64,000 nt of DNA from positions 68,346 through 132,345 of the forward strand of contig NZ_JMCB01000034.1 of NCBI RefSeq assembly GCF_000737315.1, given 5' to 3'. Source of the DNA: Hyalangium minutum (GTDB lineage: Bacteria > Myxococcota > Myxococcia > Myxococcales > Myxococcaceae). Both the position numbers and the translations under genes were made by a program. The notes under the pieces were generated by a model. The model did not search any database. It had not been told where the DNA came from and saw nothing but the letters and a program-made list of their open reading frames with translations. Position 1 is the stretch's first letter. The number at the start of each line of letters is the position of its first letter. Positions 30,208-41,861 of the stretch are shown piece after piece.

Positions 30208-31569
<1,362 letters not shown>

Positions 31570-31650
31570 CGAAAACTACCACCCCAGGTCAACACAAGAG
31601 AACAGCCTCCACTCCAACAAGAAAGACTCAGAACCACTGAATTCACCTGC

Positions 31651-31680
31651 CTCGCTCGCTCGGCTGGAGCAGCGAGCGAG
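31651..31680 (-). terminator. Hairpin downstream of the RCC1 gene
   Basis: ctcgctcgct / agcgagcgag perfect 10-bp stem; no clear U-tract. Confidence 0.45.
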
Positions 31681-31700
31681 GCCCCCCCACTGTCGGAGCA

Positions 31701-34322
31701 TCACCCTCCGATAAGACCGACTCCACCACCGGGAGGAACGAAGATGCTCCCGTCGCCCGGCAGAGCCGTGACCTGCGTGGGGCTCGACCGGTTGGTGGTC
31801 GTCCCCTCTCCGAGCTGGCCGTAGCTGTTGTAGCCGCAGGACCGGACGATGGCGCCCTTGTCCAGCGCCATCGTGTGATGGTGGCCACCAGAAGAGAGGT
31901 CCACGATAGAGCTCAAGAGGGTCGCCGCCGGCGCCGTGCGGTTGGTGGTCGTCCCATCACAGAGCTGGCCATAGGTGTTGTAGCCCCAGCCCGACACGGT
32001 CCCATCCCTCCTCAAGGCCAACGTGGAGTAGCTCCTCGCGACGATTGCGATGACATCGCCGAGGCTCAGGACCTGCACCGGCGACGAGCGGTTGGTGGTC
32101 GTCCCGTCTCCGAGCTGGCCGTAGTAGTTGTAACCCCAGGCCCTCACCGTGCCGCTCGTGGCCAGCGCCATCGTGTGGTACATGCCCGCAGAGACAGCGG
32201 CGATGCTGGGGAGTCCGGGGACCTGCACCGGCGACAGGCAGTCGGTGGTCGCTCCGTTGCCCAGCTGGCCGTAGGAGTTGTAGCCCCAGGTCCACACAGT
32301 GCCGTCCGCCTTCAGTGCCACCGTGTGGTAGATGCCCGCAGCGATGGAGATCACACCGTTGAGGCCAGGGACCTGCGTCGGCGAGGAGCGAGAGATGTTC
32401 GTTCCGTTTCCGAGCTGGCCGTAGCCGTTGTAGCCCCAGGTCCACACGGTGCCGTCTGCCTTGAGCGCCACCGTGTGGTAGCCTCCGGGGGAGACCGCGA
32501 TGACGCCCTCCAACCCGGGCACGAGCTGCGGCGTGGGGCTGTTGGTGGTCGTCCCGTTGCCCAGCTGGCCGTAGCCGTTGTAGCCCCAGGTCCACACGGT
32601 GCCGTCATCCTTCAGCACGACCGTGTGGTGGGTGCCCACCTCCGCGTCGACGACGCCGCTCATCCCCGTCAGCAGTGCAGGCGTGAGCCTGTTGGTGGTC
32701 GTCCCGTCGCCCAGCTGGCCGTAGGAGTTGTAGCCCCAGGTCCACAGCGCCCCGCCCTTCCCCACGGCCACCGAGTGGGCAGTGCCGCCAGCCGTCGAGA
32801 CGATCCCGCTGACCACGACGGCCACGGGCGAGAGGCGCTGGGAGACGGTCCCATCTCCCAGCTGGCCGTAGTAGTTGTAGCCCCAGCCAAACAGGGTGTG
32901 AGGGTTCGTCACGACCAGCTGGCGCTTCTGGGCCACTGTGTGAGTGGCACCCGCGCCGAACATCTTGACGCCGGTCATCCCCGGGACCTGCACCGGCGTG
33001 GCGGAAGTGGTGGTGCTCCCGATTCCCAGCTGTCCGTTGTAGTTGGAACCCCAGGCATACAAGGTGCCATCCTGCCGCTTGGCCACGGAGTGGAAGGCGC
33101 CGGCGGCGATCTCGACGGCTTGGGTGAGGCCCGACACCTGCACCGGGAAGACGCTGTCGACGGTGGTCCCATTTCCCAGCTGGCCGTAGGAGTTGGAGCC
33201 CCAGCTCCACGCGGTGCCGTCGCTCTTCACGCTGACCGTGTGGTAGTAGCCTCCGGAGAGGGAGCGGACGCCGCTGATGCCCGCCACCTGTACGGGCGTC
33301 AACCGGGTGAGGGTGGTCCCGTCCCCCAGCTGCCCGTTGGCGTTGGATCCCCAGGCCCAAGCGCTTCCGTCCTTCTTCACGGCCACCGTGTGGAGGTAAC
33401 CCGCGGCGATGCCGAAGACGCCGCTGAGACCGGACACCTGCACGGGCGTCAGGCGGCTCGTGGTGGTCCCATCCCCGAGCTGGCCGTAGCCGTTGTAACC
33501 CCAGGCCCACACGGTCCCGTCCGCCTTCAGCGCCACCGTCCGAGCGTAGAAGGTCGCCACCGCGACGACGTCGGTCAGGCCGGGCACCTGCCTGGGCACC
33601 GCATGGAGCGTGGTGGTGCCATCTCCGAGCTGGCCGCTGGAGTTGTACCCCCAGGTCCACACGCTCCCATCCTCCGTCACCGCCGCCGAGTGCGTGTCCC
33701 CGGCCGACACGGAGACGACGTGGCTCACCCCCCTCACCCTCGTGGGAGAATTGCGCTGGGTCCTCTCGCCGTTGCCGAGCTGGCCATAGGTGTTGTAGCC
33801 CCACCCCCACACAGAGCCGTCCGACTTCACCTCCAGCGTGTGGTTGCCGCCGAGGCTCAGGCTGGGACAGAACTGGACGACGTTCCGGAACACCGTCTTG
33901 GGCAGGTTGTTGCAGTAGCTGCGATTGCCATTGCTGTCGATGATCATCGGGTAGGCCTTCACCTCGAAGCCGTGCACCCCGCAGCCCACCCCGGCCTCGC
34001 TGAAGAACCACTCCCCCGTCTCTCCCACGCGCTCGTCGACCGCATGCAGCGTGCCGTCGACGTAGTACTCGAGCTTCGCGGCATTGGCCCCATTGATGGC
34101 CGTCCAGGTTCCCGCGCCGGCCAGCTCGCCCTCGAAGGAGCTCACGCCTTCCAGCGAGAGGTCGTCGATGGCCGCCCCCGACGAGCACAGCGCCGACTCC
34201 TGGGTCCCCAGCGTCTCCTCCGGGCCGATCCCTCCCTCTTCGGGAGGAGCACCACAAGCCGCCAGCAGCACCGAGGCCAATACCGCCAACACATCCGAAC
34301 GCTTCAGGTCTCTCTTGAGCAT
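31701..34322 (-). CDS. RCC1-repeat lipoprotein (14 repeats) with N-terminal Ig-like domain
   Basis: LLAAC lipobox, 14 copies of (W/C)G(Y/S)NxxGQL(G/C)xG; ATG 34322. Confidence 0.92.
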   Translation of the reverse strand: MLKRDLKRSDVLAVLASVLLAACGAPPEEGGIGPEETLGTQESALCSSGAAIDDLSLEGVSSFEGELAGAGTWTAINGANAAKLEYYVDGTLHAVDERVGETGEWFFSEAGVGCGVHGFEVKAYPMIIDSNGNRSYCNNLPKTVFRNVVQFCPSLSLGGNHTLEVKSDGSVWGWGYNTYGQLGNGERTQRNSPTRVRGVSHVVSVSAGDTHSAAVTEDGSVWTWGYNSSGQLGDGTTTLHAVPRQVPGLTDVVAVATFYARTVALKADGTVWAWGYNGYGQLGDGTTTSRLTPVQVSGLSGVFGIAAGYLHTVAVKKDGSAWAWGSNANGQLGDGTTLTRLTPVQVAGISGVRSLSGGYYHTVSVKSDGTAWSWGSNSYGQLGNGTTVDSVFPVQVSGLTQAVEIAAGAFHSVAKRQDGTLYAWGSNYNGQLGIGSTTTSATPVQVPGMTGVKMFGAGATHTVAQKRQLVVTNPHTLFGWGYNYYGQLGDGTVSQRLSPVAVVVSGIVSTAGGTAHSVAVGKGGALWTWGYNSYGQLGDGTTTNRLTPALLTGMSGVVDAEVGTHHTVVLKDDGTVWTWGYNGYGQLGNGTTTNSPTPQLVPGLEGVIAVSPGGYHTVALKADGTVWTWGYNGYGQLGNGTNISRSSPTQVPGLNGVISIAAGIYHTVALKADGTVWTWGYNSYGQLGNGATTDCLSPVQVPGLPSIAAVSAGMYHTMALATSGTVRAWGYNYYGQLGDGTTTNRSSPVQVLSLGDVIAIVARSYSTLALRRDGTVSGWGYNTYGQLCDGTTTNRTAPAATLLSSIVDLSSGGHHHTMALDKGAIVRSCGYNSYGQLGEGTTTNRSSPTQVTALPGDGSIFVPPGGGVGLIGG

Positions 34323-34335
34323 GGTCTCTCCCCTC

Positions 34336-34351
34336 TGCACTCGCCACGCCA
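34336..34351 (-). promoter_or_regulatory. Candidate sigma54 -24/-12 promoter for the RCC1 gene
   Basis: Minus strand TGGCGTGGCGAGTGCA (GG-N10-GC); unusually close to the ATG. Confidence 0.45.
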
Positions 34352-34480
34352 GCCGTGGCGGCCAACCATGGCTCCCTGCTTTTCCAGCGATTTCCTTGGG
34401 TTTCCTATTTACGGGTTTCGCCAGAGAGGGCCTCTGGCGGAGGCCCCTGGTCACAGCAGTAGCCAGGCCCAGGGCAGGCC

Positions 34481-34500
34481 CTGATCACAGCTGTTATCAG
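34481..34500. promoter_or_regulatory. Palindromic activator site 1
   Basis: CTGATCAC-AGCT-GTTATCAG; a weaker copy CTGGTCAC-AGCA-GTAGCCAG lies at 34447-34466. Confidence 0.6.
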
Positions 34501-34527
34501 GCGGGCCCGCCGCACCCGAGCGCGGCC

Positions 34528-36054
34528 TCAGTACTGGCCCTTCAGCGTGGTGGTGTAGCTGGTGAAGGCGCGGAGTTGGACGAACCAGGTACCCGGAAGC
34601 GGGTTGGGCAGGGTGCACGTCTCGTTGTTGCCCTTGCGCAGGGGCCGACACTGGTAGGCGTACGTCTCTGGCAGCTGGCCATAGCGGACGTAGAGGTCCG
34701 CGTCTCCCGTGCCTCCGGAGAGGGTGAAGACCACCGAGGGCCGCCCGGCCGGGACCTCCAGCTTGAAGTTCTTCTGGCCGCCGGTGATGTCGGACACACT
34801 TGTTGCCACCCCGTTGGCAATGGGCGTGGCCTGGGGGCGCTTGTACAGCAACCGGTTGGGCGAGGTCGTGTCAAAGACATCCAGCTGCACCTGATCCACG
34901 CTCGCATCGGCGATCAAGCGAGCAGGGATGCCGGCGGGCAAGACGCCCTGGGACAGAAGGATGGCCGCCAAGCCGCTCACGTGAGGTGTGGCGAACGAGG
35001 TCCCCTCGACGTTCGTCCAGGCCTCGTCACTGAACATCGCCGCGGATTTGATGTTCGCACCGGGAGCCCAGAGGTCCAGACATTCTCCAAAGTTGGATCC
35101 ATTGAAGCCGCTCGACCAGCGCGTCTGCGCCTCGTCGATCGCGCCCACGGTCAAGATGCGCTCCCGGAACGGGTGGGTGGCGTCCGGCTGGAGACGGGCC
35201 GGCGAGCAGGTGCAGGCGTTCAGGCCGGCATTCCCCGCTGCGACCACCAGGACGAGCCCGGGATTGCTCGCCATGACATCCGCGGCCGCATCGAGCGGTG
35301 CGAACGGGCTCGTGGTGGTGAAGCTCAGGTTGACGATGGCCGGCGTGACGGCGTTGTTCGCCACCCACTCCATCGCTTGCACCAGCCCATCAACCGTCGC
35401 CTCGCCCAACTGGTTGAACGCCTTGACCGAGTTCAAACGGACCTTCTTGGCGACACCGTACGTCTTGCCTCCAATGATCCCCGCCACGGCGGTACCATGC
35501 CCGGAGAAGTCATCCCCGAACTCCGTGGTGTTGTTGAACGCGACCTGGGCGCGCCCTTCGAACTCCGAGTGCGATGCCCGGATGCCCGTGTCGATGATGT
35601 AGACGTTGACGCCCGTCGCGTCTTCGGCCTGGTAGCTGTTGCTCAGCGGCAGCCGCTCCTGGTCGATCCGATCCAGGTTCCAAGGCGCTGGAGACTGGAC
35701 GCCCGACACCCTGACGATGCCGTTCTCCTGGACGTACTCCACCTGGGGATCCTCGGCCAGCGCCCGAGCCTGCTCCTCGTTGGCGGAGATGAGGAAGCCG
35801 CGAAAGGCGGTCTCGTGGGTGGTGAGGACACGTGCGCCGTACGGCTTGGCCAGCGCATCTGCCCTCAGCGCCATGCTCATCAGACCCCGTGCGGGCTTCT
35901 CCTTGAGGACGACGAGGTACTCGCCCTTCACGGGCTCCGGGGACCTCACCAGCTTGCCCTGCTCCGGCACCCGAGGTGGCGCAGCGAGCGCCCCCATCGA
36001 GGTCAGGACGAGACACGCGGTGATCAACCTGCTCCAGCTCTTCATGCTTGGCAT
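34528..36054 (-). CDS. Secreted subtilisin-like S8 peptidase with I9 propeptide and PPC domain
   Basis: IIDTG, HGTAVAG and GTSFATPHVSG triad; AAGN; GGTGDADLYVRYG PPC domain; start 36054 or 36045. Confidence 0.93.
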   Translation of the reverse strand: MPSMKSWSRLITACLVLTSMGALAAPPRVPEQGKLVRSPEPVKGEYLVVLKEKPARGLMSMALRADALAKPYGARVLTTHETAFRGFLISANEEQARALAEDPQVEYVQENGIVRVSGVQSPAPWNLDRIDQERLPLSNSYQAEDATGVNVYIIDTGIRASHSEFEGRAQVAFNNTTEFGDDFSGHGTAVAGIIGGKTYGVAKKVRLNSVKAFNQLGEATVDGLVQAMEWVANNAVTPAIVNLSFTTTSPFAPLDAAADVMASNPGLVLVVAAGNAGLNACTCSPARLQPDATHPFRERILTVGAIDEAQTRWSSGFNGSNFGECLDLWAPGANIKSAAMFSDEAWTNVEGTSFATPHVSGLAAILLSQGVLPAGIPARLIADASVDQVQLDVFDTTSPNRLLYKRPQATPIANGVATSVSDITGGQKNFKLEVPAGRPSVVFTLSGGTGDADLYVRYGQLPETYAYQCRPLRKGNNETCTLPNPLPGTWFVQLRAFTSYTTTLKGQY

Positions 36055-36079
36055 CTGTTCTCTCTTTTCAATCATTGGG

Positions 36080-36868
36080 TCAGGGAGCTGCGGCACGGCG
36101 CACCTGTGCTTGAAGGCTCAGCTCCTGCTCCTTCACGAGCCGGCGCTGGTTGTGCGCAGCGATGTACTGCAACAGCTTCTCGAGCGAGGTCCCCTTCGCG
36201 GCTTCGACCAGGGCACGAGCTCTCTCGGGCTCTTGATCCGCGAAGATCTCGTAGAGCTCCATTCGGGTCGCGGCCATCGAGCGCCTGGCGCTCAATGACA
36301 GCTCCGGGCTGAAGGAGTCCGCCAGGATGATGCCTTCGACGGTGGACACCCACTGCTCGCGAGCGGGGTTCTGTCTCCAGGCCAATGCCTCGCGCAGGTA
36401 GTCGATCCGCATCAGGCGCTTGATGCTGGACTCCAGGGACTCCTCGGCTTCTGTCGAGGAGCCCAGCGTCCGGCGCAGCTGCTCATACATCCGCGTGTCG
36501 GCGAGCAGCGCCTCGTAGTCCTTCCGTCCATTGGAATCGAGGAGGATGTGCTCGCGGAAGTAATCGAACCGCGCCAGCTCCGGCTCCGTCTTGAAGAGCT
36601 TCGCCTTCATCACGTCGGTCGCCGTGGTGAACTCGCCGTGCTCCCCTTCCTCTCCTGGAACCTCCTCGGGCGCCGCGAGCAGGGCGGGGGGAGGAGGCAC
36701 GGCGGGCCGCTCCGGCACCGCGACACGAGCCGGTGCCGGAGGAGTGTTCTCCCCCCTCACCGGGGCAGCCCTGATGAAGGCGGAGTCCTCTGGGCTGTCC
36801 AGCGCCGCGACGATGAACGCCAGCGCCACGAGCCCCGCAATGACAAACAGATACCGGCTGATCTTCAT
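36080..36868 (-). CDS. Membrane-anchored helical hypothetical protein (operon gene D)
   Basis: N-terminal hydrophobic anchor, Pro/Ala linker, charged helical domain. Confidence 0.8.
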   Translation of the reverse strand: MKISRYLFVIAGLVALAFIVAALDSPEDSAFIRAAPVRGENTPPAPARVAVPERPAVPPPPALLAAPEEVPGEEGEHGEFTTATDVMKAKLFKTEPELARFDYFREHILLDSNGRKDYEALLADTRMYEQLRRTLGSSTEAEESLESSIKRLMRIDYLREALAWRQNPAREQWVSTVEGIILADSFSPELSLSARRSMAATRMELYEIFADQEPERARALVEAAKGTSLEKLLQYIAAHNQRRLVKEQELSLQAQVRRAAAP

Positions 36869-36889
36869 GGGATCTCGGCCTACGTCTGG

Positions 36890-37984
36890 CTAAGGGATGA
36901 CGTCGGTGGGCACGCCATAGAGGATGATGCGGTTGATGTAGCGCACCTCGTCGTTCTGGAACCGCACGGAGCCCACCAGATAGCCCTGAGCCACGAGGAT
37001 GTTGGACACCAGATCCGTCGACACTGGCGCGATGTTGTAGACCTTCCCGAAGTAGGTGGTCCTCTGAATGTCCACGATGGGATCCAGGGTGCCATCCGCC
37101 TTCACCAGCTCGTCGCCCACCTTGAGGGTCTGCGCCTGCACGATGCGGCCCTCGCCGTTGATGACAGGATGCTCGAGGGTGATGCTGAGCCGGCCGCCAG
37201 ACTGGGTGGTGATGATGCAGAGCTTCTGCTCCGCATCGCGGAGCTCTCGCGTGTAGCTATAGGTGCTGTTCTGGTGCAGCCGCAGGTTGTCGAGCGTGGA
37301 GTCCGGGGTCAGCGTGATCAGGTCATCGCGCAGTGAGTTCATCGCGTCGAGGATGGGCACCTCTCCGCTGGAGAAGAGGATCTTCTGCTCGGGGGTGTAG
37401 CAAGCCGCCTCGCAGTAGCCGTTCACATGGGAGGGAGTGAAGACCGGCTGGGTGCTCTCCTTATCGAGATAGAACATGCAGTCCTCGAGATTTTTGTGAG
37501 GGAAGAGCTGGATGTTGTCCTCGGAGGTGATGTCCGACGAGGTGCTGAAGGTGGGGTAGAGCTGACGCCCCTTCCTCCGCCACGAGTCCCGCGACCACTG
37601 GAAGTAACCGTTGAGATCCGTCGTCTGGTAGGTGGGGCCCGACAGGTACAGGGCCATCATGGCGGAGGTGTTCATCTTGAAGAGGTAGTCCGGGCCCGTG
37701 AACGCGCCCTCACCCTCCGGGTTCTTCTCCGGATCGGCCTCCAGATAGTCCTTCAGCGTCCCGCCCCCCGCGGCAGCCTGGCCCGTGTTGAAGAAGGCTG
37801 CCGGATCCCCGACGTTCTGGAGCGTCCCGCACTTGCGAGCCCACTCGACTCGAGCCGCCGCCGCCGCATTCGTACTCAGGCTGTCGACAGTGCATCGAGC
37901 CGTGAGGATGGGCTGCGCGAGCACCTGCATCGGCAACAGCGCCCCCACCGCCAAGGCGATGGCACCCCAGATTCTATTGAACAT
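36890..37984 (-). CDS. Secreted protein with C-terminal Hint (Hedgehog/intein-like) domain (operon gene C)
   Basis: Signal peptide; A|CYTPEQKIL block A, ITLEHP block B, LKVGD, KVYNI block F, QGYLVGS block G. Confidence 0.85.
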   Translation of the reverse strand: MFNRIWGAIALAVGALLPMQVLAQPILTARCTVDSLSTNAAAAARVEWARKCGTLQNVGDPAAFFNTGQAAAGGGTLKDYLEADPEKNPEGEGAFTGPDYLFKMNTSAMMALYLSGPTYQTTDLNGYFQWSRDSWRRKGRQLYPTFSTSSDITSEDNIQLFPHKNLEDCMFYLDKESTQPVFTPSHVNGYCEAACYTPEQKILFSSGEVPILDAMNSLRDDLITLTPDSTLDNLRLHQNSTYSYTRELRDAEQKLCIITTQSGGRLSITLEHPVINGEGRIVQAQTLKVGDELVKADGTLDPIVDIQRTTYFGKVYNIAPVSTDLVSNILVAQGYLVGSVRFQNDEVRYINRIILYGVPTDVIP

Positions 37985-38044
37985 TCAAACCCTCGCTTGT
38001 TCGTGCCGCACCATGCGGCACGGGAATCAGTGACAGGCGCTCCG

Positions 38045-40099
38045 CTACGGAGAGGAGCGCGGAAGGGAGCCGCCAGTCGTGGGCATGGCGACGAAGCTCG
38101 CGGCCGCCTTCCGGAGATCCGGGTTCGGATCGTGCTCGCTGGCCCAGGCCAGCAGGGGCAGCGCCTCCGGCACGGCCGCGCGCTGCTCTCCGAGGAGGTG
38201 GATCACGTCGACCCGGACTCCGTTGGTGGGATCCATGCGCAGCGCCTGCGCCAGAGCGGGGAGCAGGGGCGCCAAGGGCCGGAAGCCGCTGGCGAAGACG
38301 GCGACCCGCCGGACCTCGGGGGCGGGATCCTTGAGCATGAACTCGGACAGGAGCTGGTCGGCGCGGGGATCCGGGATGACGCGCAGCGCCTCGAGGGCGG
38401 CCTGGCGAATCTGGGGATCCGCGGATCGGAGCGCATCCTCGAACGTGCTCAGCGCGTCCGGCGAGCGGGTGTTGCCCAGGGTCCGCAGCGCCAGCGCCTG
38501 CTGCTCCGCATTGGAGGCCGTGCTGTACTCGCTGTTGAGCTCGTGGACGAGGGCCTCCGTACCCTTCGCGTCCGTGTCGGAGAGCTGGAAGGCGGCATTG
38601 CCGAGCGCCAGCTTCGCCGTGTCCCGGAGCATCCCGTCCGCGTCGTTCCTCGCGCCACGCAGGGCGTCCAGGCCCTCGCGGGTGGGGTCCTTCGCCACTC
38701 CCAGCGCGGCCACCGCGTCCATGCGGATGTCCGTGGGAATGGACTGATCGCCGCAGACCTCCGCCAGGGACTGGATGGCCTCGCGGGTGCTGGCCGCGGA
38801 GAGCGCGCCGAGCATGGGGCTGGCAGCGATCGGATCCATCCCCGCGCGAATGATGCCGGGGACCTTGAGGGCCTCGGAGGGGTGGAGCATGAAGAGGGCG
38901 CGGAGCTGCTCCAAGGCCTGGGTGCGGGCATCATCCTTGGCCTGGGGATCTTCCGGGAGCGAGCGCAGCTCCTTGACCAGGGTGTCGAAGTCCTTGCCCT
39001 TCAGCACCTGGCGGTACTGCTCCATCGGGTCCTGCTCCATGCCCTGGAAGGCCGCCATGGAGGCGGTGCTCAGAGAGGCCCGGCGCGCCATGAAAGTGCC
39101 GATCAGCGTCGGATCCGGGCGGCGCTCCAGCAGGCTCAGGCTCAGGGACGACTCATACGTGGTGGGAGGCATGGCCTGGCCCGCCTCCATCTCCACCCGC
39201 TCCCGCCCCTCGAGCGAGCGCGCCCAGAGATCGCGCTCCAGCTCGAAGGTGCTCGAGGCGCTCACGGTGATGTGGATCTGGCCAGTCAGAGGCTCGAGCC
39301 CCAACGGGGACGCCACGTGGGAGTAGGACTCCTTGCGCTTCTCGAAGCGGCCGGAGGCCAGGCGCTGATACACGGCATGGTAGCGGCCCGTGGTGTCGTA
39401 CTCCTCGGCGCTCCAGGTGGCGCCCGGCACACCAGCCACGACGAACTGCGAACTCGCCACGACTCCCCGGAGGATGTTTCGCACGAGCGGATCCGTCGCC
39501 TGCTCGAAGTGCGTGAACGTCGCCAGACCGGTCTTGTCGTACGTGAGGAAGAAGGGAAGCTGAAGGGCTGCGGACAGGCTGCGCTGGACGTCGGGGGCCA
39601 GGGGGCCCGCGCCGCCAACGTCCACCGTCAGCGAGGAGAGCTTGATGTTCACCCGGGCATCGACGCGCTCGGCGTCGACAGAGACGACACCCACGTTCCA
39701 CTCGCCCCGGAGGTTGAACCTCATCGAGGGCAGCGCCTGCGCGCCAGGCTGTGCCGGGCGAAAGGTGAGCTTCTGATCAGCGCTCAGGGAGTACCGGTAG
39801 AGCATCCCAGGGGTCCACGCGCGAGTTCCCGTGGAGGGCTTGGAGGACACGGCCGGGGCCGGCGCCGACGGGCCTCCGGCCGAAGGGGCTGCAGCCTGAG
39901 AGGACTGCGATTCCTGGGAGGGAGCCTCCGCAGAGGACGGGGACGCAAGCGCCCACAGCCCCAGGAGACTGACAGCCAGGAGCGCGAGCGTCACCCCGAA
40001 GAGGACGCGTGCGCGCTGACCCGCCAGGAGGCCTCCTGGGGTCGACGCCTGTCCCACGACAGCGATTGGCTTGCTGCTCACGTTGCCCGACTTCCGCAT
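38045..40099 (-). CDS. Exported protein with vitellogenin/MTP-like N-terminal beta domain and HEAT repeats (operon gene B)
   Basis: Hydrophobic leader, YRYSL...strand-rich region, EEYDTTGRYHAVY, then LRTLGN and VRRVAV HEAT-like helices; start uncertain (40099 or 40210). Confidence 0.7.
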   Translation of the reverse strand: MRKSGNVSSKPIAVVGQASTPGGLLAGQRARVLFGVTLALLAVSLLGLWALASPSSAEAPSQESQSSQAAAPSAGGPSAPAPAVSSKPSTGTRAWTPGMLYRYSLSADQKLTFRPAQPGAQALPSMRFNLRGEWNVGVVSVDAERVDARVNIKLSSLTVDVGGAGPLAPDVQRSLSAALQLPFFLTYDKTGLATFTHFEQATDPLVRNILRGVVASSQFVVAGVPGATWSAEEYDTTGRYHAVYQRLASGRFEKRKESYSHVASPLGLEPLTGQIHITVSASSTFELERDLWARSLEGRERVEMEAGQAMPPTTYESSLSLSLLERRPDPTLIGTFMARRASLSTASMAAFQGMEQDPMEQYRQVLKGKDFDTLVKELRSLPEDPQAKDDARTQALEQLRALFMLHPSEALKVPGIIRAGMDPIAASPMLGALSAASTREAIQSLAEVCGDQSIPTDIRMDAVAALGVAKDPTREGLDALRGARNDADGMLRDTAKLALGNAAFQLSDTDAKGTEALVHELNSEYSTASNAEQQALALRTLGNTRSPDALSTFEDALRSADPQIRQAALEALRVIPDPRADQLLSEFMLKDPAPEVRRVAVFASGFRPLAPLLPALAQALRMDPTNGVRVDVIHLLGEQRAAVPEALPLLAWASEHDPNPDLRKAAASFVAMPTTGGSLPRSSP

Positions 40100-40261
40100 G
40101 GGGGTGCTCCGAGTTGGCGGCTCTTGCCGCTTCAGTTTCAGTTCTGGTTTAGAGGGCGGGTGCCGCATCCTCAGCCGATCGCTCGACCGAGGAGACAGCA
40201 CCCGGTTCATCCCGCCTGGCGACAGCCAATGCCTCTCGGGCACGGCCGTCGCGTGGCGGTA

Positions 40262-41446
40262 TCAGCCGCAGCCCAGGCTCGACATGGTGCCGCTGGAGTT
40301 GGCCAGGTTGAGGACCTTGGAGATGCCGGGCCAGTTGGCGATGGTGACGTTCCAGGTCTTCTTGAAGAAGAGGAAGTTGACCTTCACGAAGGCCTGCAGC
40401 GAGCCCTTGAGCGCGCTCAGGTTGAGGTCAGCCTTGAGGGACCAACTGGGCGAGCAGAGGGTCCAGCCGAGGCTGGCCGCGGCCTGCGCGGTGGCGTTGA
40501 TCAGGGACAGGGAGCCGGACACGCCGAAGCTGGCGATGGCGACGTTCACCGCAGCGGAGGCCACCACGTTGGCCCAGCCGCCGGCGTAGGAGGTGATCGC
40601 GGCCAGCGCGGGGCTCACCTGGCCGTTCAAGCCCATCTTCACGCCACCGGTCAGCTGCGACTTCACGGTGACCGGCACGGGGCCGACCATGAACGACTTG
40701 GAGACGGAGAAGAACGAGCGGCTCCAGTTGATGGGGGTGGGCGCGAAGGTCCCAGCGAGGTTGGCGCTCCAGATCTGCGAGCCCAGGGCGTACAGCGCGG
40801 CGGTGCCGCTGTTGCAGCCGCCCTGCTGCCCACAGACGTACGAGCGGCCGCGGACCAGCTCTTTCTCCGTGTTGAAGGCGGTGCCAAAGAGCCGGCCCTC
40901 GGCGAGCGCCTCTTCCTTCTTCGCCACGGTGCCGTTCGCCGGCGTCGCGGTGACGGAGGTGTTGACGTTGTAGCCCGCACCGAAGATGGAGTTACCGAAC
41001 CGCTCCGTGCGCTGGTAGTAGACACTGACGGGAGTGACCGCCATCTGCCCGATGAGCTTCAGCCCGGCCCCGGTCTGCGTCGGCGGCGTCTCGGACGGAG
41101 GCGGCACGTTCGGCGTGCTGGCCTCGGGGATGGTGGCCTGGAGGTAGTTCACGTTCCGCCGGCCATCGTTGATGTCGAGGAGAATGGGCGCGTTGAGCAG
41201 CTGCGCCTCGTTGTTGACGACCGCGTCCTGCTCGGGCGGCGTGTAGGTCGCGTTCGCGTCGAATGGGAGGACCTGCGTCTCCCAGGGGATCCTGTTGTCG
41301 AGCTGCGTGTTGGACGGGTAGATGGTGTACGGGTACTTCACGCTGTCGACGACATAGGGATTCGGGTCCTGGTAATCCTGCGCGGACGCGACGGTTGCGA
41401 CGGTGACTGCCACAAGCGCGAATGCGCGCGATACTGCCTTCATCAT
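40262..41446 (-). CDS. Secreted beta-sheet-rich protein (operon gene A)
   Basis: Sec signal (MMKAVSRAFALVAVTVATVASA), long amphipathic strands including SKSFMVGPVPVTV and FVKVNFLFFKKTW; GAGGGG upstream. Confidence 0.85.
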   Translation of the reverse strand: MMKAVSRAFALVAVTVATVASAQDYQDPNPYVVDSVKYPYTIYPSNTQLDNRIPWETQVLPFDANATYTPPEQDAVVNNEAQLLNAPILLDINDGRRNVNYLQATIPEASTPNVPPPSETPPTQTGAGLKLIGQMAVTPVSVYYQRTERFGNSIFGAGYNVNTSVTATPANGTVAKKEEALAEGRLFGTAFNTEKELVRGRSYVCGQQGGCNSGTAALYALGSQIWSANLAGTFAPTPINWSRSFFSVSKSFMVGPVPVTVKSQLTGGVKMGLNGQVSPALAAITSYAGGWANVVASAAVNVAIASFGVSGSLSLINATAQAAASLGWTLCSPSWSLKADLNLSALKGSLQAFVKVNFLFFKKTWNVTIANWPGISKVLNLANSSGTMSSLGCG

Positions 41447-41485
41447 GTTGAGCCCCTCATTGCGTGGAACGGCTCGCAGCCCTGG

Positions 41486-41501
41486 TGCACGGGGCGAGCC
41501 A
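41486..41501 (-). promoter_or_regulatory. Candidate sigma54 -24/-12 promoter for the four-gene operon
   Basis: Minus strand TGGCTCGCCCCGTGCA (GG-N10-GC), 40 nt upstream of ATG 41446. Confidence 0.6.
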
Positions 41502-41631
41502 CCCAAGAGGGGTTGGCCTTCTTTCATCGATCTACCGTGATTTCACGGGGTTACGGTTCTCCAGGGAATACAGGAATCCGGCAACAACCGTTATCACTGA
41601 TAACTCACATGCCCTGGGAGTGGCTCGTGGC

Positions 41632-41651
41632 CTGGTAACGCGCGTTATCAG
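41632..41651. promoter_or_regulatory. Palindromic activator site 2
   Basis: CTGGTAAC-GCGC-GTTATCAG; extra half-sites GTTATCACTGATAAC at 41590-41604. Confidence 0.6.
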
Positions 41652-41754
41652 GGTCGCTCGCGGAGCCGCTGCCCCGCTGAGGACGCGCTCGCGCCTGGGC
41701 GACTTGAGCCCCTGGGAGTATGAGCGGGGCGCCCTACCTGCTGAGCCGAGTTCG

Positions 41755-41861
41755 GGCTGGCGCTCGAAACGTAGGCTACCCGCTGCCCACGAGATCGAAC
41801 ATCTGGCCCACGCCCTTGGCGCGCGCCACTTCGTAGAGCGCTCGCGCCAGCGCCACGTCCT
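41755..41861. repeat. 107-bp direct repeat, copy 1 (3' ends of the 44819 gene and the cyclodeaminase)
   Basis: Matches 45144-45250 with one mismatch (41830 t vs 45219 c). Confidence 0.95.

What the first reader, a model, noticed from the sequence alone, without database searches (positions are those of the whole stretch)
36890..37402. Hint domain appears set for N-terminal acyl shift only, with a short C-terminal tail
Seen: Cys1 (37400-37402), TLEH block B and VYNI block F are present. The position of intein His-Asn aligns with Gly-Ser (GYLVGS), followed by 25 aa (VRFQNDEVRYINRIILYGVPTDVIP). Known: His-Asn drives C-terminal cleavage in inteins; Hedgehog lacks it and uses a downstream adduct-recognition region. 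Inference: ligase-type autoprocessing, with the tail as a minimal adduct or partner recognition element. The later QN could alternatively cyclise.
Basis: partly seen in the sequence, partly recalled or inferred. Interest (0 to 1): 0.7.

Follow-up and report, generated by a model that had tools for sequence, protein, structure and literature searches.

The report
Self-cleaving Hint domain of predatory bacteria
This gene encodes a secreted myxobacterial protein whose C-terminal half is an intein/Hedgehog-like (Hint) domain built to cut itself off its N-terminal partner domain; the type was already described in predatory bacteria in 2009, so it is a sound but not a new find.

Summary
ORF 36890..37984 (-) encodes a 364-aa protein: signal peptide, a 171-aa Cys-rich N-domain, a Hint fold (C195-S339) and a 25-aa tail. 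Gly338-Ser339 occupies the intein His-Asn position.

AlphaFold2 plus Foldseek give a Hint fold (E 2e-9 to BIL and mini-intein structures). A profile of the Hint+tail module finds 1543 cluster representatives, almost always at the extreme C-terminus. The named examples sampled are from Myxococcota and Bdellovibrionota. Near-invariant are Cys(-4), Cys1, Thr/His of block B, Asn317, Ser/Thr339 and Gln343. The tail length is nearly constant.

This architecture fits the "C-type BIL + PPS-1 domain" family of predatory bacteria (Dori-Bachash et al. 2009) and resembles a bacterial group noted by Bürglin (2008). I could not read the 2009 paper, so membership is inferred.

Most likely it performs one N-S acyl shift at Ala194|Cys195 and releases the N-domain. 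Asn344 varies in 27 of 150 representatives, which argues against cyclisation at Q-N.

The additions here are a conserved gene module with a membrane-anchored helical protein and an S8 subtilase, and an N-domain with no structural match.

The parts
36890..37984 (-). Whole ORF, 364 aa plus stop: precursor made of signal peptide, N-domain, Hint domain and tail
   Evidence: ORF list and sequence. 197 full-length homologues, all about 350-400 aa, in Myxococcota; the closest is Hyalangium at 86%.
37916..37984 (-). Predicted Sec signal peptide (residues 1-23, ...QVLA|QP)
   Evidence: By inspection of the sequence. Hydrophobic N-termini are present in nearly all relatives. AF2 pLDDT is below 50 here.
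37403..37915 (-). N-domain (residues 24-194), the presumed released product. It has four conserved Cys (C31, C52, C169, C191) and an RCxxDSL...WARxC motif, and is probably the 'PPS-1' domain of the literature.
   Evidence: Invariant columns. AF2 pLDDT 94.8 with no PDB or BFVD fold match. The same domain occurs without Hint, fused to two PPC domains, with the boundary at YC[DE]S (L013, L016). Its N-terminal motif is found in 97 of 151 superfamily representatives, always just upstream of the Hint domain.
37412..37414 (-). Cys191 (position -4), conserved in 147 of 147 representatives; probably the last structural disulfide Cys of the N-domain
   Evidence: Cys counts upstream of Cys1 are even (4 in 87 of 119). 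It is retained in the Hint-less paralogues.
37400..37402 (-). Cys195 = Cys1 of the Hint domain, the predicted nucleophile for the N-S acyl shift on the Ala194-Cys195 bond
   Evidence: 147 of 147 conserved. Residue -1 is Ser, Gly or Ala. The junction reads C-[YF]-T-P. It is the only Cys of the Hint part in 116 of 119 representatives.
36968..37402 (-). Hint fold domain (residues 195-339)
   Evidence: AF2 model. Foldseek matches to BIL, intein and Hedgehog structures. Profile hits to inteins.
37169..37180 (-). Block B T269-L-E-H272 (TxxH)
   Evidence: Thr in 149 of 151 and His in 150 of 151. Aligned to block B of KlbA and RadA inteins and of Drosophila Hh.
37031..37042 (-). Block F V315-Y-N-I318, with Asn317 in place of the intein block-F Asp
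   Evidence: Asn317 in 150 of 151. Aligned to VYDL of inteins.
36968..36973 (-). Gly338-Ser339 at the position of the intein His-Asn and of Hedgehog Ser-Cys143
   Evidence: Gly in 146 of 150. Position 339 is Ser 137, Thr 9, Ala 2, Asp 2. It ends the last strand, 335-338. The positional equivalence is inferred.
36893..36967 (-). 25-aa C-terminal tail with Gln343-Asn344 (36953-36958) and Asn351-Arg352 (36929-36934), followed by the stop codon
   Evidence: Consensus [SA]x[YF]QN[ED]Gxx[Y]LNRx[ILV]LRxx[IL]P. Tail length is 24-31 aa in 132 of 144. AF2 gives short helices at low confidence. Hydrophobic moment 0.63, p about 0.06 against shuffles.
36080..36868 (-). Downstream partner gene: 262-aa protein with an N-terminal membrane anchor, a Pro/Ala-rich linker and a helical domain (21-nt spacer after the Hint gene)
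   Evidence: No Pfam, NCBIfam or PDB hit. It lies next to the Hint gene in about 20 of 27 related loci, including Polyangium, Chondromyces and Kofleriaceae. A homologue is present in a distant low-GC locus (hmmsearch 8e-14).
34528..36096 (-). S8 subtilase (I9 propeptide, S8 domain, PPC domain), third gene of the module; the exact start codon is uncertain
   Evidence: Pfam hits. Syntenic in the orthologous loci. An S8 gene lies directly after the Hint gene in Sorangium L032 and in low-GC L033.

Best explanation
The gene encodes a Sec-secreted precursor of the kind described for predatory bacteria as 'PPS-1 domain + C-type bacterial intein-like (BIL) domain'.

After export, the disulfide-bonded N-domain (Gln24-Ala194) and the Hint domain fold. 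Cys195 is the only unpaired cysteine. Helped by Thr269 and His272, it attacks the Ala194 carbonyl (N-S acyl shift). The resulting thioester is then resolved, so the N-domain is released from the Hint+tail fragment in a single-turnover reaction.

There is no canonical C-terminal cleavage or splicing: Gly-Ser replaces His-Asn, and only a 25-aa tail follows. The tail is an integral, conserved extension of the domain. I infer that it packs on or caps the active-site region, so that it is needed for folding or catalysis or controls which nucleophile gets in.

What is shown: the fold, the motifs, their conservation, the domain boundaries and the gene neighbourhood. What is inferred: that cleavage actually occurs, the site Ala194|Cys195, and the way the thioester is resolved. 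I take hydrolysis, possibly through a Ser339 ester, as more likely than transfer to a specific acceptor.
For: Hint fold. Profile homology to inteins and BIL.

Catalytic N-junction residues are near-invariant across 151 cluster representatives: Cys1 147 of 147, Thr 149, His 150, and residue -1 Ser, Gly or Ala.

C-junction residues are absent. Residue 338 is Gly and 339 is Ser or Thr. Residue 340 is variable (Ser, Ala or Val). Block-F position 328 is Asn, Gln, His or Lys.

The module lies at the extreme C-terminus in nearly all of the 150 best hits out of 1543.

The domain boundary falls exactly before Cys195. The N-domain occurs alone fused to PPC domains, ending YC[DE]S. Hint+tail occurs behind other N-terminal regions.

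The even number of Cys upstream and none downstream leave Cys1 as the free thiol.

The named examples sampled belong to Myxococcota and Bdellovibrionota, some under the source name 'cell surface protein'. This fits the published C-type BIL/PPS-1 description and Bürglin's secreted bacterial Hint-like group.
Against: There is no experimental evidence for cleavage of this protein.

I could not read Dori-Bachash et al. 2009, and I found no homologue carrying a Bdellovibrio bacteriovorus name. Identity with the published C-type BIL is therefore inferred from architecture and taxonomy.

Pfam and NCBIfam Hint models hit only below their thresholds.

The near-invariance of Ser/Thr339, Gln343, Asn351 and Arg352, and the constant tail length, suggest chemistry or recognition beyond plain hydrolysis. 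This explanation does not account for that.
Confidence: 0.7

Rival explanations
1. Hedgehog-like transfer. The thioester, perhaps after passing to Ser339 as a branched ester in the way Hedgehog uses Cys143, is attacked by a specific acceptor. The acceptor could be a lipid, a sterol, a cell-envelope amine or a partner protein. The released N-domain would then carry a covalent C-terminal adduct that anchors it at the cell surface, and the tail would help to bind the acceptor.
For: Ser or Thr is kept in 146 of 150 representatives at the position that aligns with Hedgehog Cys143, shown in 2025 to carry a branched intermediate.

The tail is conserved and constant in length, with Gln343 near-invariant and Asn351 and Arg352 mostly conserved, and is weakly amphipathic.

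The junction [SGA]-C-[YF]-T-P resembles G-C-F-T-P of Drosophila Hh.

Source names say 'cell surface protein'.

There is a conserved neighbouring membrane-anchored protein and a subtilase. Myxococcota make sterols (abstract of 10.1101/2024.11.01.621555).
Against: No adduct or acceptor is known.

The tail is about 25 aa against roughly 65-70 aa for the Hedgehog sterol-recognition region (the latter figure is general knowledge), and it is modelled at low confidence.

hhalign does not align the C-terminal parts with Hh.

Hedgehog's general base Asp46 has no universally conserved counterpart: Asp250 is invariant in the close family but below 85% in the superfamily.

The family is also abundant in Bdellovibrionota, for which sterol synthesis is not known to me.
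Confidence: 0.2
2. C-terminal processing at Gln343-Asn344. Asn344 (or Gln343) cyclises as in inteins, cutting off the last 20-21 residues, possibly with ligation of the N-domain to that peptide as in A-type BIL splicing.
For: Q-N is invariant in the close family, and Gln343 is kept in 149 of 150 in the superfamily. Inteins ending in Gln or Asp are known (my recollection of Amitai et al. 2004).
Against: Asn344 is replaced by Tyr, Ser, Asp, Ala, Thr, His or Leu in 27 of 150 representatives. There is no preceding His, since residue 342 is Tyr or Phe. There is no +1 nucleophile, since residue 345 is Glu or Asp. Q-N lies 4-5 residues beyond the last strand of the fold, in a region with pLDDT below 50. 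Bürglin's related group has Q but not N.
Confidence: 0.06
3. Self-cleavage at Gly338|Ser339 by an N-O acyl shift of Ser339 on its own peptide bond (as at G|SVVV in SEA domains), releasing the tail as a 26-residue peptide.
For: Gly-Ser/Thr is near-invariant, followed in this protein by Val (GSV). Reviews state that B-type BILs cleave their C-terminus by an atypical reaction.
Against: This rests purely on a motif resemblance. There is no structural or experimental support. Residue 340 varies.
Confidence: 0.04
4. Catalytically dead Hint fold used only as a structural or binding module.
For: Hint models of Pfam and NCBIfam are matched only below threshold.
Against: Cys1, Thr and His of block B are kept in 147 to 150 of about 150 distant representatives. 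That is not expected for a dead domain.
Confidence: 0.03

Closest known systems
C-type bacterial intein-like (BIL) domains with the PPS-1 ('putative predator-specific domain 1') N-terminal domain, Bdellovibrio bacteriovorus and myxobacteria (Dori-Bachash, Dassa, Peleg, Pineiro, Jurkevitch, Pietrokovski 2009, Funct Integr Genomics 9:153; PMID 19153786)
   Same: Hint-type domain at the C-terminal end of secreted proteins of predatory bacteria (Myxococcota, Bdellovibrionota). It is preceded by a conserved family-specific N-terminal domain and is distinct from A- and B-type BILs.
   Different: Nothing contradictory was found, but the paper is not held and no B. bacteriovorus sequence could be compared. 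Points that I cannot attribute to that paper are the S8 and membrane-protein gene module, the Ser/Thr339 and Gln343 invariants, and the size of the superfamily (1543 clusters).
Bacterial secreted proteins with a C-terminal Hint-like domain noted by Bürglin 2008 (STIAU_1829, MXAN_6253, plu1731, Serratia, Yersinia, Reinekea; PMC2362128, Additional files 16 and 17)
   Same: Signal peptide, N-region with conserved Cys, small residue-Cys junction, VYNL block F...GG[FI]LVG[D] in place of His-Asn, then xxMQ and an 18-20 aa tail ending LP. The Stigmatella 274- and 290-aa proteins next to a family member (L002) have VLVGDLAWQNQ and bridge the two groups.
   Different: That group has Asp rather than Ser after Val-Gly. 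Its junction is [NY][SG]C[MILV]A rather than [SGA]C[YF]TP. It has a different N-region and includes gamma-proteobacteria.
Hedgehog/Hog autoprocessing domain (Hint + sterol or adduct recognition region)
   Same: Secreted precursor. The released N-terminal domain sits directly before a Hint domain. Small residue-Cys-aromatic junction, TxxH, no His-Asn, a nucleophilic side chain at the end of the last strand (Cys143 in Hh, Ser339 here), and a C-terminal extension instead of a C-extein.
   Different: The extension is 25 aa rather than about 65-70 aa and has no detectable similarity. Ser replaces Cys. No conserved Asp46 equivalent. Sequence similarity is limited to block B. Foldseek ranks BILs and mini-inteins above Hh.
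A-type BIL / PT-HINT (PF07591) and B-type BIL / Hint_2 (PF13403)
   Same: Bacterial Hint domains in secreted or surface proteins that mainly cleave rather than splice. The best Pfam hit is PT-HINT, and the C. thermocellum A-type BIL structure is a close structural match (TM 0.85).
   Different: A-type domains keep His-Asn and release a C-terminal cargo such as a toxin; here there is no His-Asn and no cargo. PT-HINT scores 17 bits against a cut-off of 27.7. Hint_2 is not hit at all at E up to 1.
Class 1 mini-inteins (e.g. Ssp DnaB, Mtu RecA, Npu DnaE)
   Same: Fold, Cys1, block B TxxH, block F VY[DN].
   Different: No terminal (His)-Asn, no +1 nucleophile, no host protein to religate, no homing endonuclease. 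It is not inserted in a conserved protein.

Membership tests
Hint (Hedgehog/intein) superfamily | Hint beta-fold | tested here: met
   AF2 model pLDDT 81.9. Foldseek probability 1.00, E 2e-9 to 1e-6, against BIL2, DnaB and RecA inteins, C. thermocellum BIL and Hh 1AT0.
Hint (Hedgehog/intein) superfamily | N-terminal nucleophile (Cys/Ser) and block B TxxH | tested here: met
   Cys195, Thr269 and His272 are invariant in the family and in 147-150 of about 150 representatives.
C-type BIL + PPS-1 (Dori-Bachash et al. 2009) | [quoted passage not shown] | tested here: met
   The module ends within a few residues of the C-terminus in nearly all of the 150 best hits. Named members are Myxococcota, Bdellovibrionales, Oligoflexia and Pseudobdellovibrionaceae.
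C-type BIL + PPS-1 (Dori-Bachash et al. 2009) | Conserved family-specific N-terminal domain (PPS-1) upstream of the BIL | tested here: inconclusive
   A conserved N-domain motif (RCxxDSL..WAxxC) precedes the Hint domain in 97 of 151 representatives. I have no PPS-1 reference sequence to confirm that it is the same domain; only a citing sentence is available.
C-type BIL + PPS-1 (Dori-Bachash et al. 2009) | Sequence similarity to the B. bacteriovorus HD100 type members | not testable with these tools
   The paper is not held. Word-indexed searches from Bdellovibrionota-like queries returned no B. bacteriovorus-named protein.
Class 1 intein | C-terminal (His)-Asn that cyclises | tested here: not met
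   Gly338-Ser339 is at that position, with Gly in 146 of 150 and Ser or Thr in 146 of 150.
Class 1 intein | +1 Cys/Ser/Thr on a C-extein, and insertion in a host protein that is religated | tested here: not met
   Residue 340 varies (Ser, Ala, Val, Asn, Leu). Only 25 aa follow before the stop codon. There is no homologue of the protein without the Hint domain that continues across the site; the Hint-less paralogues carry PPC domains instead.
Hedgehog Hog domain | [quoted passage not shown] | tested here: met
   The junction is [Ser/Gly/Ala]-Cys-[Tyr/Phe]-Thr-Pro. A signal peptide is present.
Hedgehog Hog domain | Second catalytic Cys (Cys143) and general base Asp46 | tested here: not met
   There is no second Cys in the Hint part (116 of 119). 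Ser or Thr is at the aligned position. No Asp is conserved at 85% or more in the corresponding region of the superfamily.
Hedgehog Hog domain | Sterol/adduct recognition region of about 65-70 aa, and sterol transfer | tested here: not met
   The tail is 25 aa with no similarity to HhC beyond block B. Transfer activity is not testable here.
A-type BIL / PT-HINT (PF07591) | Match to the family model above threshold, C-terminal His-Asn, downstream cargo | tested here: not met
   17 bits against a gathering score of 27.7. No His-Asn and no cargo.
B-type BIL / Hint_2 (PF13403) | Match to the family model | tested here: not met
   Not reported at E up to 1.
C-terminal sorting signals (MYXO-CTERM, PEP-CTERM, LPXTG and similar) as an explanation of the tail | Match to NCBIfam sorting-domain models; hydrophobic helix plus basic end | tested here: not met
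   No such NCBIfam hit. By inspection the tail has no transmembrane stretch.

The most novel reading that the evidence does not exclude
A bacterial counterpart of Hedgehog chemistry. The Hint domain passes the secreted N-domain from Cys195 to Ser339 as a branched ester. With the help of the conserved 25-aa tail, it then hands the N-domain to a specific acceptor, such as an envelope lipid, a sterol, peptidoglycan or the neighbouring membrane protein. This would covalently anchor a so far fold-less 'predator' domain on the cell surface. The co-conserved S8 subtilase would later release or process it.
Probability: 0.15. Interest if true: 0.8.

Novelty: new member of a known kind. Interest (0 to 1): 0.35.

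Why it matters
As a sequence feature this is a further member of an already described, though almost unstudied, Hint family of predatory bacteria, so by itself it is ordinary.

The family deserves a bench look for three reasons. It is large, with 1543 clusters at 50% identity, and the examples I could name are from Myxococcota and Bdellovibrionota. It keeps a hydroxyl residue exactly where Hedgehog was recently shown to form its branched intermediate, plus an unexplained invariant Gln and a fixed-length tail. It also travels with a membrane-anchored helical protein and a subtilase.

If the thioester is handed to a defined acceptor, this would be a prokaryotic analogue of Hedgehog lipidation. 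It would also give a simple, short model for how Hint domains choose their nucleophile.

Tried and rejected
1. Curated family assignment. Pfam and NCBIfam give only sub-threshold Hint hits and no Hint_2, so the domain cannot be filed as A- or B-type BIL.

2. Fold of the N-domain. The model is very confident, but there is no match in the PDB (best E 0.5, TM 0.13) or in BFVD.

3. Residue-level alignment to Hedgehog by hhalign. Only block B aligned. The Ser339-Cys143 and Asp250-Asp46 equivalences are therefore not established by that test. Asp250 is also not conserved superfamily-wide.

4. My impression that the 462-466-aa lipoproteins in the Stigmatella cassettes are divergent subtilases. This is not supported (phmmer E 0.29; no PDB or family hit).

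5. Homology of the Stigmatella 270- and 288-aa membrane proteins to the window's 262-aa protein. Not detected. They share only the architecture.

6. The tail as a C-terminal sorting signal. No NCBIfam match and no hydrophobic stretch.

7. Looking for B. bacteriovorus-named homologues to tie the family to the 2009 paper. None was returned, and the paper and its companion are not held.

8. Promoter and terminator scan of 31500-41800. Nothing on the minus strand and counts at shuffle level. This is weakly compatible with co-transcription and nothing more.

9. Paralogues in the window. None; there is a single copy.
Full report
**What is there**

The finding lies in ORF 36890..37984 on the minus strand, which encodes 364 aa. 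Its parts are:
- a typical signal peptide (residues 1-23);
- a 171-aa N-domain with four invariant cysteines (C31, C52, C169, C191);
- a Hint-type domain running to Gly338-Ser339;
- 25 further residues before the stop codon.

Block B (T269-L-E-H272, 37169-37180), block F (V315-Y-N-I318, 37031-37042), GYLVGS and the tail VRFQNDEVRYINRIILYGVPTDVIP are all as described. The window comes from a Hyalangium-like myxobacterium. The best homologues are 86% (an unnamed metagenome protein and Hyalangium gracile) and 83% (H. versicolor) identical.

**Is it a Hint domain, and more than chance?**

Curated models hit only below threshold: PT-HINT at E 0.007, Intein_splicing at 0.04 and intein_Nterm at 0.008. 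All other evidence agrees with a Hint domain:
- A profile of 24 family members hits the KlbA, RadA and DnaE inteins and the C. thermocellum BIL among PDB sequences, best E 1.9e-4.
- The AlphaFold2 model (pLDDT 81.9) has a beta-rich domain from 195 to 338, with the last strand at 335-338.
- Foldseek matches it with probability 1.00 to Tetrahymena BIL2 (E 2e-9), the Ssp DnaB mini-intein, the Mtu RecA intein, the C. thermocellum BIL (TM 0.85, rmsd 2.3) and Hedgehog 1AT0 (TM 0.75).

**Gly-Ser in place of His-Asn**

SNILVAQGYLVGS aligns without gaps to the C-terminal HNFALKNGFIASN of the Npu DnaE intein (that sequence is from my memory). This puts Asn328 on the block-F Asn, Gly334 on the block-G Gly and Ser339 on the terminal Asn.

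The same register puts Ser339 on Cys143 of Drosophila Hedgehog (NSVAASC; sequence printed in PMC12054796). That Cys was shown in 2025 to carry a branched thioester intermediate.

Bürglin's published alignment of a related bacterial group places its ...LVGD under Hedgehog ...ASCY in the same way. hhalign of my profile against HhC aligned only block B. The equivalence is therefore an inference from motif register and model topology.

**The family**

The full-length protein has 197 homologues at E <= 1e-3, all about 350-400 aa. They come from Hyalangium, Archangium, Stigmatella, Cystobacter, Corallococcus, Pyxidicoccus and Polyangium, and sources call them 'Hint domain-containing protein' or 'cell surface protein'. 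A genome scan adds Chondromyces, Kofleriaceae and one Bdellovibrionota MAG.

A profile of Hint+tail alone (A3), run against 1.84 billion cluster representatives, finds 1543 proteins at E <= 1e-3 and 266 at <= 1e-30. In nearly all of the best 150 the module ends at the protein's C-terminus. The N-terminal parts range from about 100 to 800 residues. Where names exist they are Bdellovibrionales, Oligoflexia, Pseudobdellovibrionaceae or Sorangium.

Over 151 representatives the conservation is as follows:

| Position | Conservation |
|---|---|
| Cys(-4) | 147 of 147 |
| Residue -1 | Ser 77, Gly 68, Ala 2 |
| Cys1 | 147 of 147 |
| Thr269 | 149 |
| His272 | 150 |
| Asn317 | 150 |
| Gly338 | 146 |
| Residue 339 | Ser 137, Thr 9, Ala 2, Asp 2 |
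| Gln343 | 149 of 150 |
| Asn344 | 123 of 150 |
| Asn351 | 124 |
| Arg352 | 117 |

The tail after the Ser is 24-31 residues in 132 of 144 cases. Its consensus is [SA]x[YF]QN[ED]Gxx[Y]LNRx[ILV]LRxx[IL]P. In the model the tail forms two short helices at low confidence, pLDDT 50-58. It is modestly amphipathic, with moment 0.63 and p about 0.06 against shuffles.

**Domain boundaries**

The N-domain occurs without any Hint domain. In those proteins it ends ...YC[DE]S and is followed by two PPC domains (L013 776-2122, L016 4657-5946). Hint+tail occurs behind other N-terminal regions: the Stigmatella 274- and 290-aa lipoproteins with KCGCFE...VLVGDLAWQNQ, and a Bdellovibrionota protein with SGCFTG...LSGSARYQNEEVEKLNRVLL. 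This places the module boundary immediately before Cys195.

The number of cysteines upstream of Cys1 is even (4 in 87 of 119, 2 in 16), and the Hint part has no other Cys in 116 of 119. Cys(-4) is therefore best read as the last disulfide partner of the N-domain, and Cys1 as the only free thiol.

The N-terminal RCxxDSL..WAxxC motif of the N-domain is detected in 97 of 151 representatives. It always lies about 90-170 residues before Cys1, even in 900-aa proteins.

The N-domain models at pLDDT 94.8 but has no structural neighbour in the PDB or BFVD.

**Neighbourhood**

In the window the gene is followed, after 21 nt, by a 262-aa protein with a membrane anchor, a Pro/Ala-rich linker and a helical domain; it has no family or PDB hit. 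After that comes an S8 subtilase with I9 and PPC domains.

This order is kept in the orthologous loci. Those loci also carry an upstream HEAT/Vitellogenin_N protein and a 421-aa unknown protein.

The Hint gene and the 262-aa gene stay together in about 20 of 27 loci, including Polyangium, Chondromyces and Kofleriaceae. In Sorangium an S8 gene follows the Hint gene directly. In a distant low-GC contig the order is Hint, S8, then a 220-aa homologue of the 262-aa protein (hmmsearch 8e-14).

Stigmatella has three tandem cassettes of Hint protein, an analogous roughly 270-290-aa membrane protein and a roughly 460-aa lipoprotein. I could not show homology of the latter two to the window's genes.

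**Comparison with what is known**

[quoted passage not shown] He said Dassa and Pietrokovski had seen them before. Their C-termini (...GGFLVGDxxMQ plus an 18-20 aa tail ending LP) have the same design as here.

Dori-Bachash et al. [quoted passage not shown] A later paper cites it as describing C-type BILs with a new domain, PPS-1. The architecture and taxonomy found here fit that description. I could not read the paper or compare its sequences, so membership is inferred. My recollection that autocleavage was reported there is unverified.

The domain is not an intein: it has no His-Asn, no +1 nucleophile and no host protein. It is not a Hog domain: it has no second Cys, no sterol-recognition region and no similarity beyond block B. 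It does not match the A-type or B-type BIL models.

**Mechanism**

The best-supported reading is a single-turnover N-S acyl shift at Ala194|Cys195, followed by release of the N-domain (confidence about 0.7).

Whether water or a specific acceptor resolves the thioester cannot be told. The invariance of Ser/Thr339, Gln343 and the tail leaves room for Hedgehog-like transfer, which I put at about 0.15-0.2.

Cyclisation at Q-N is unlikely, because Asn344 is not conserved across the superfamily and lacks the usual helpers. A SEA-like Gly|Ser cleavage is only a motif resemblance.

**Verdict**

Interest is moderate to low as a discovery. It is higher as a pointer to an experimentally open question.

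Noticed in passing
window 34528-36868 (-) with 36890-37984 (-); also L032 6001-9326, L033 6001-9448: The Hint protein, a membrane-anchored helical protein of about 220-290 aa, and an S8 subtilase form a gene module. The module is kept, with permuted order, from Cystobacterineae to Sorangium and to a distant low-GC organism. No function is known for the module.
   Followed up: partly
window 37403-37915 (-): The 171-aa N-domain models at pLDDT 94.8 but has no structural match in the PDB or BFVD (best Foldseek E 0.5). It may be a fold with no solved representative.
   Followed up: partly
L013 776-2122; L016 4657-5946: Paralogues carry the same N-domain without the Hint domain, fused instead to two PPC (pre-peptidase C-terminal) domains. 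They lie close to a full Hint-family gene in Archangium genomes.
   Followed up: partly
L002 4306-14103 (Stigmatella aurantiaca DW4/3-1): Three tandem cassettes each hold a Hint protein (290, 366 or 274 aa), a membrane protein of about 270-290 aa and a lipoprotein of about 462-466 aa. The short Hint proteins are lipoproteins with a KCGCFE junction and VLVGDLAWQNQ, i.e. Asp instead of Ser after Val-Gly.
   Followed up: partly
window 38045-40243 (-) and 40262-41527 (-): A 732-aa HEAT-repeat protein matches Vitellogenin_N (lipoprotein N-terminal region, E 2.7e-13), and a 421-aa protein has no family hit. Both lie upstream and are syntenic in the close orthologous loci only. Their order is swapped between the Hyalangium/Corallococcus and Archangium loci.
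   Followed up: partly
window 31701-34454 (-): A 917-aa RCC1-repeat protein lies downstream of the subtilase. Its N-terminal region of about 150 aa also matches separate small ORFs in Archangium loci (for example L001 13617-14075 and 14406-14915).
   Followed up: no
P0235 (Oligoflexia MAG, 437 aa): This is the only representative among the best 150 in which about 140 residues follow the tail. The extension is Lys/Asn-rich and could be a gene fusion or a missed stop codon.
   Followed up: no
window 37427-41638 (+), 34084-36312 (+), 36548-37336 (+): Very long ORFs run antisense to the real genes, up to 1403 aa. This is the usual artefact of high G+C DNA and they are not genes.
   Followed up: no
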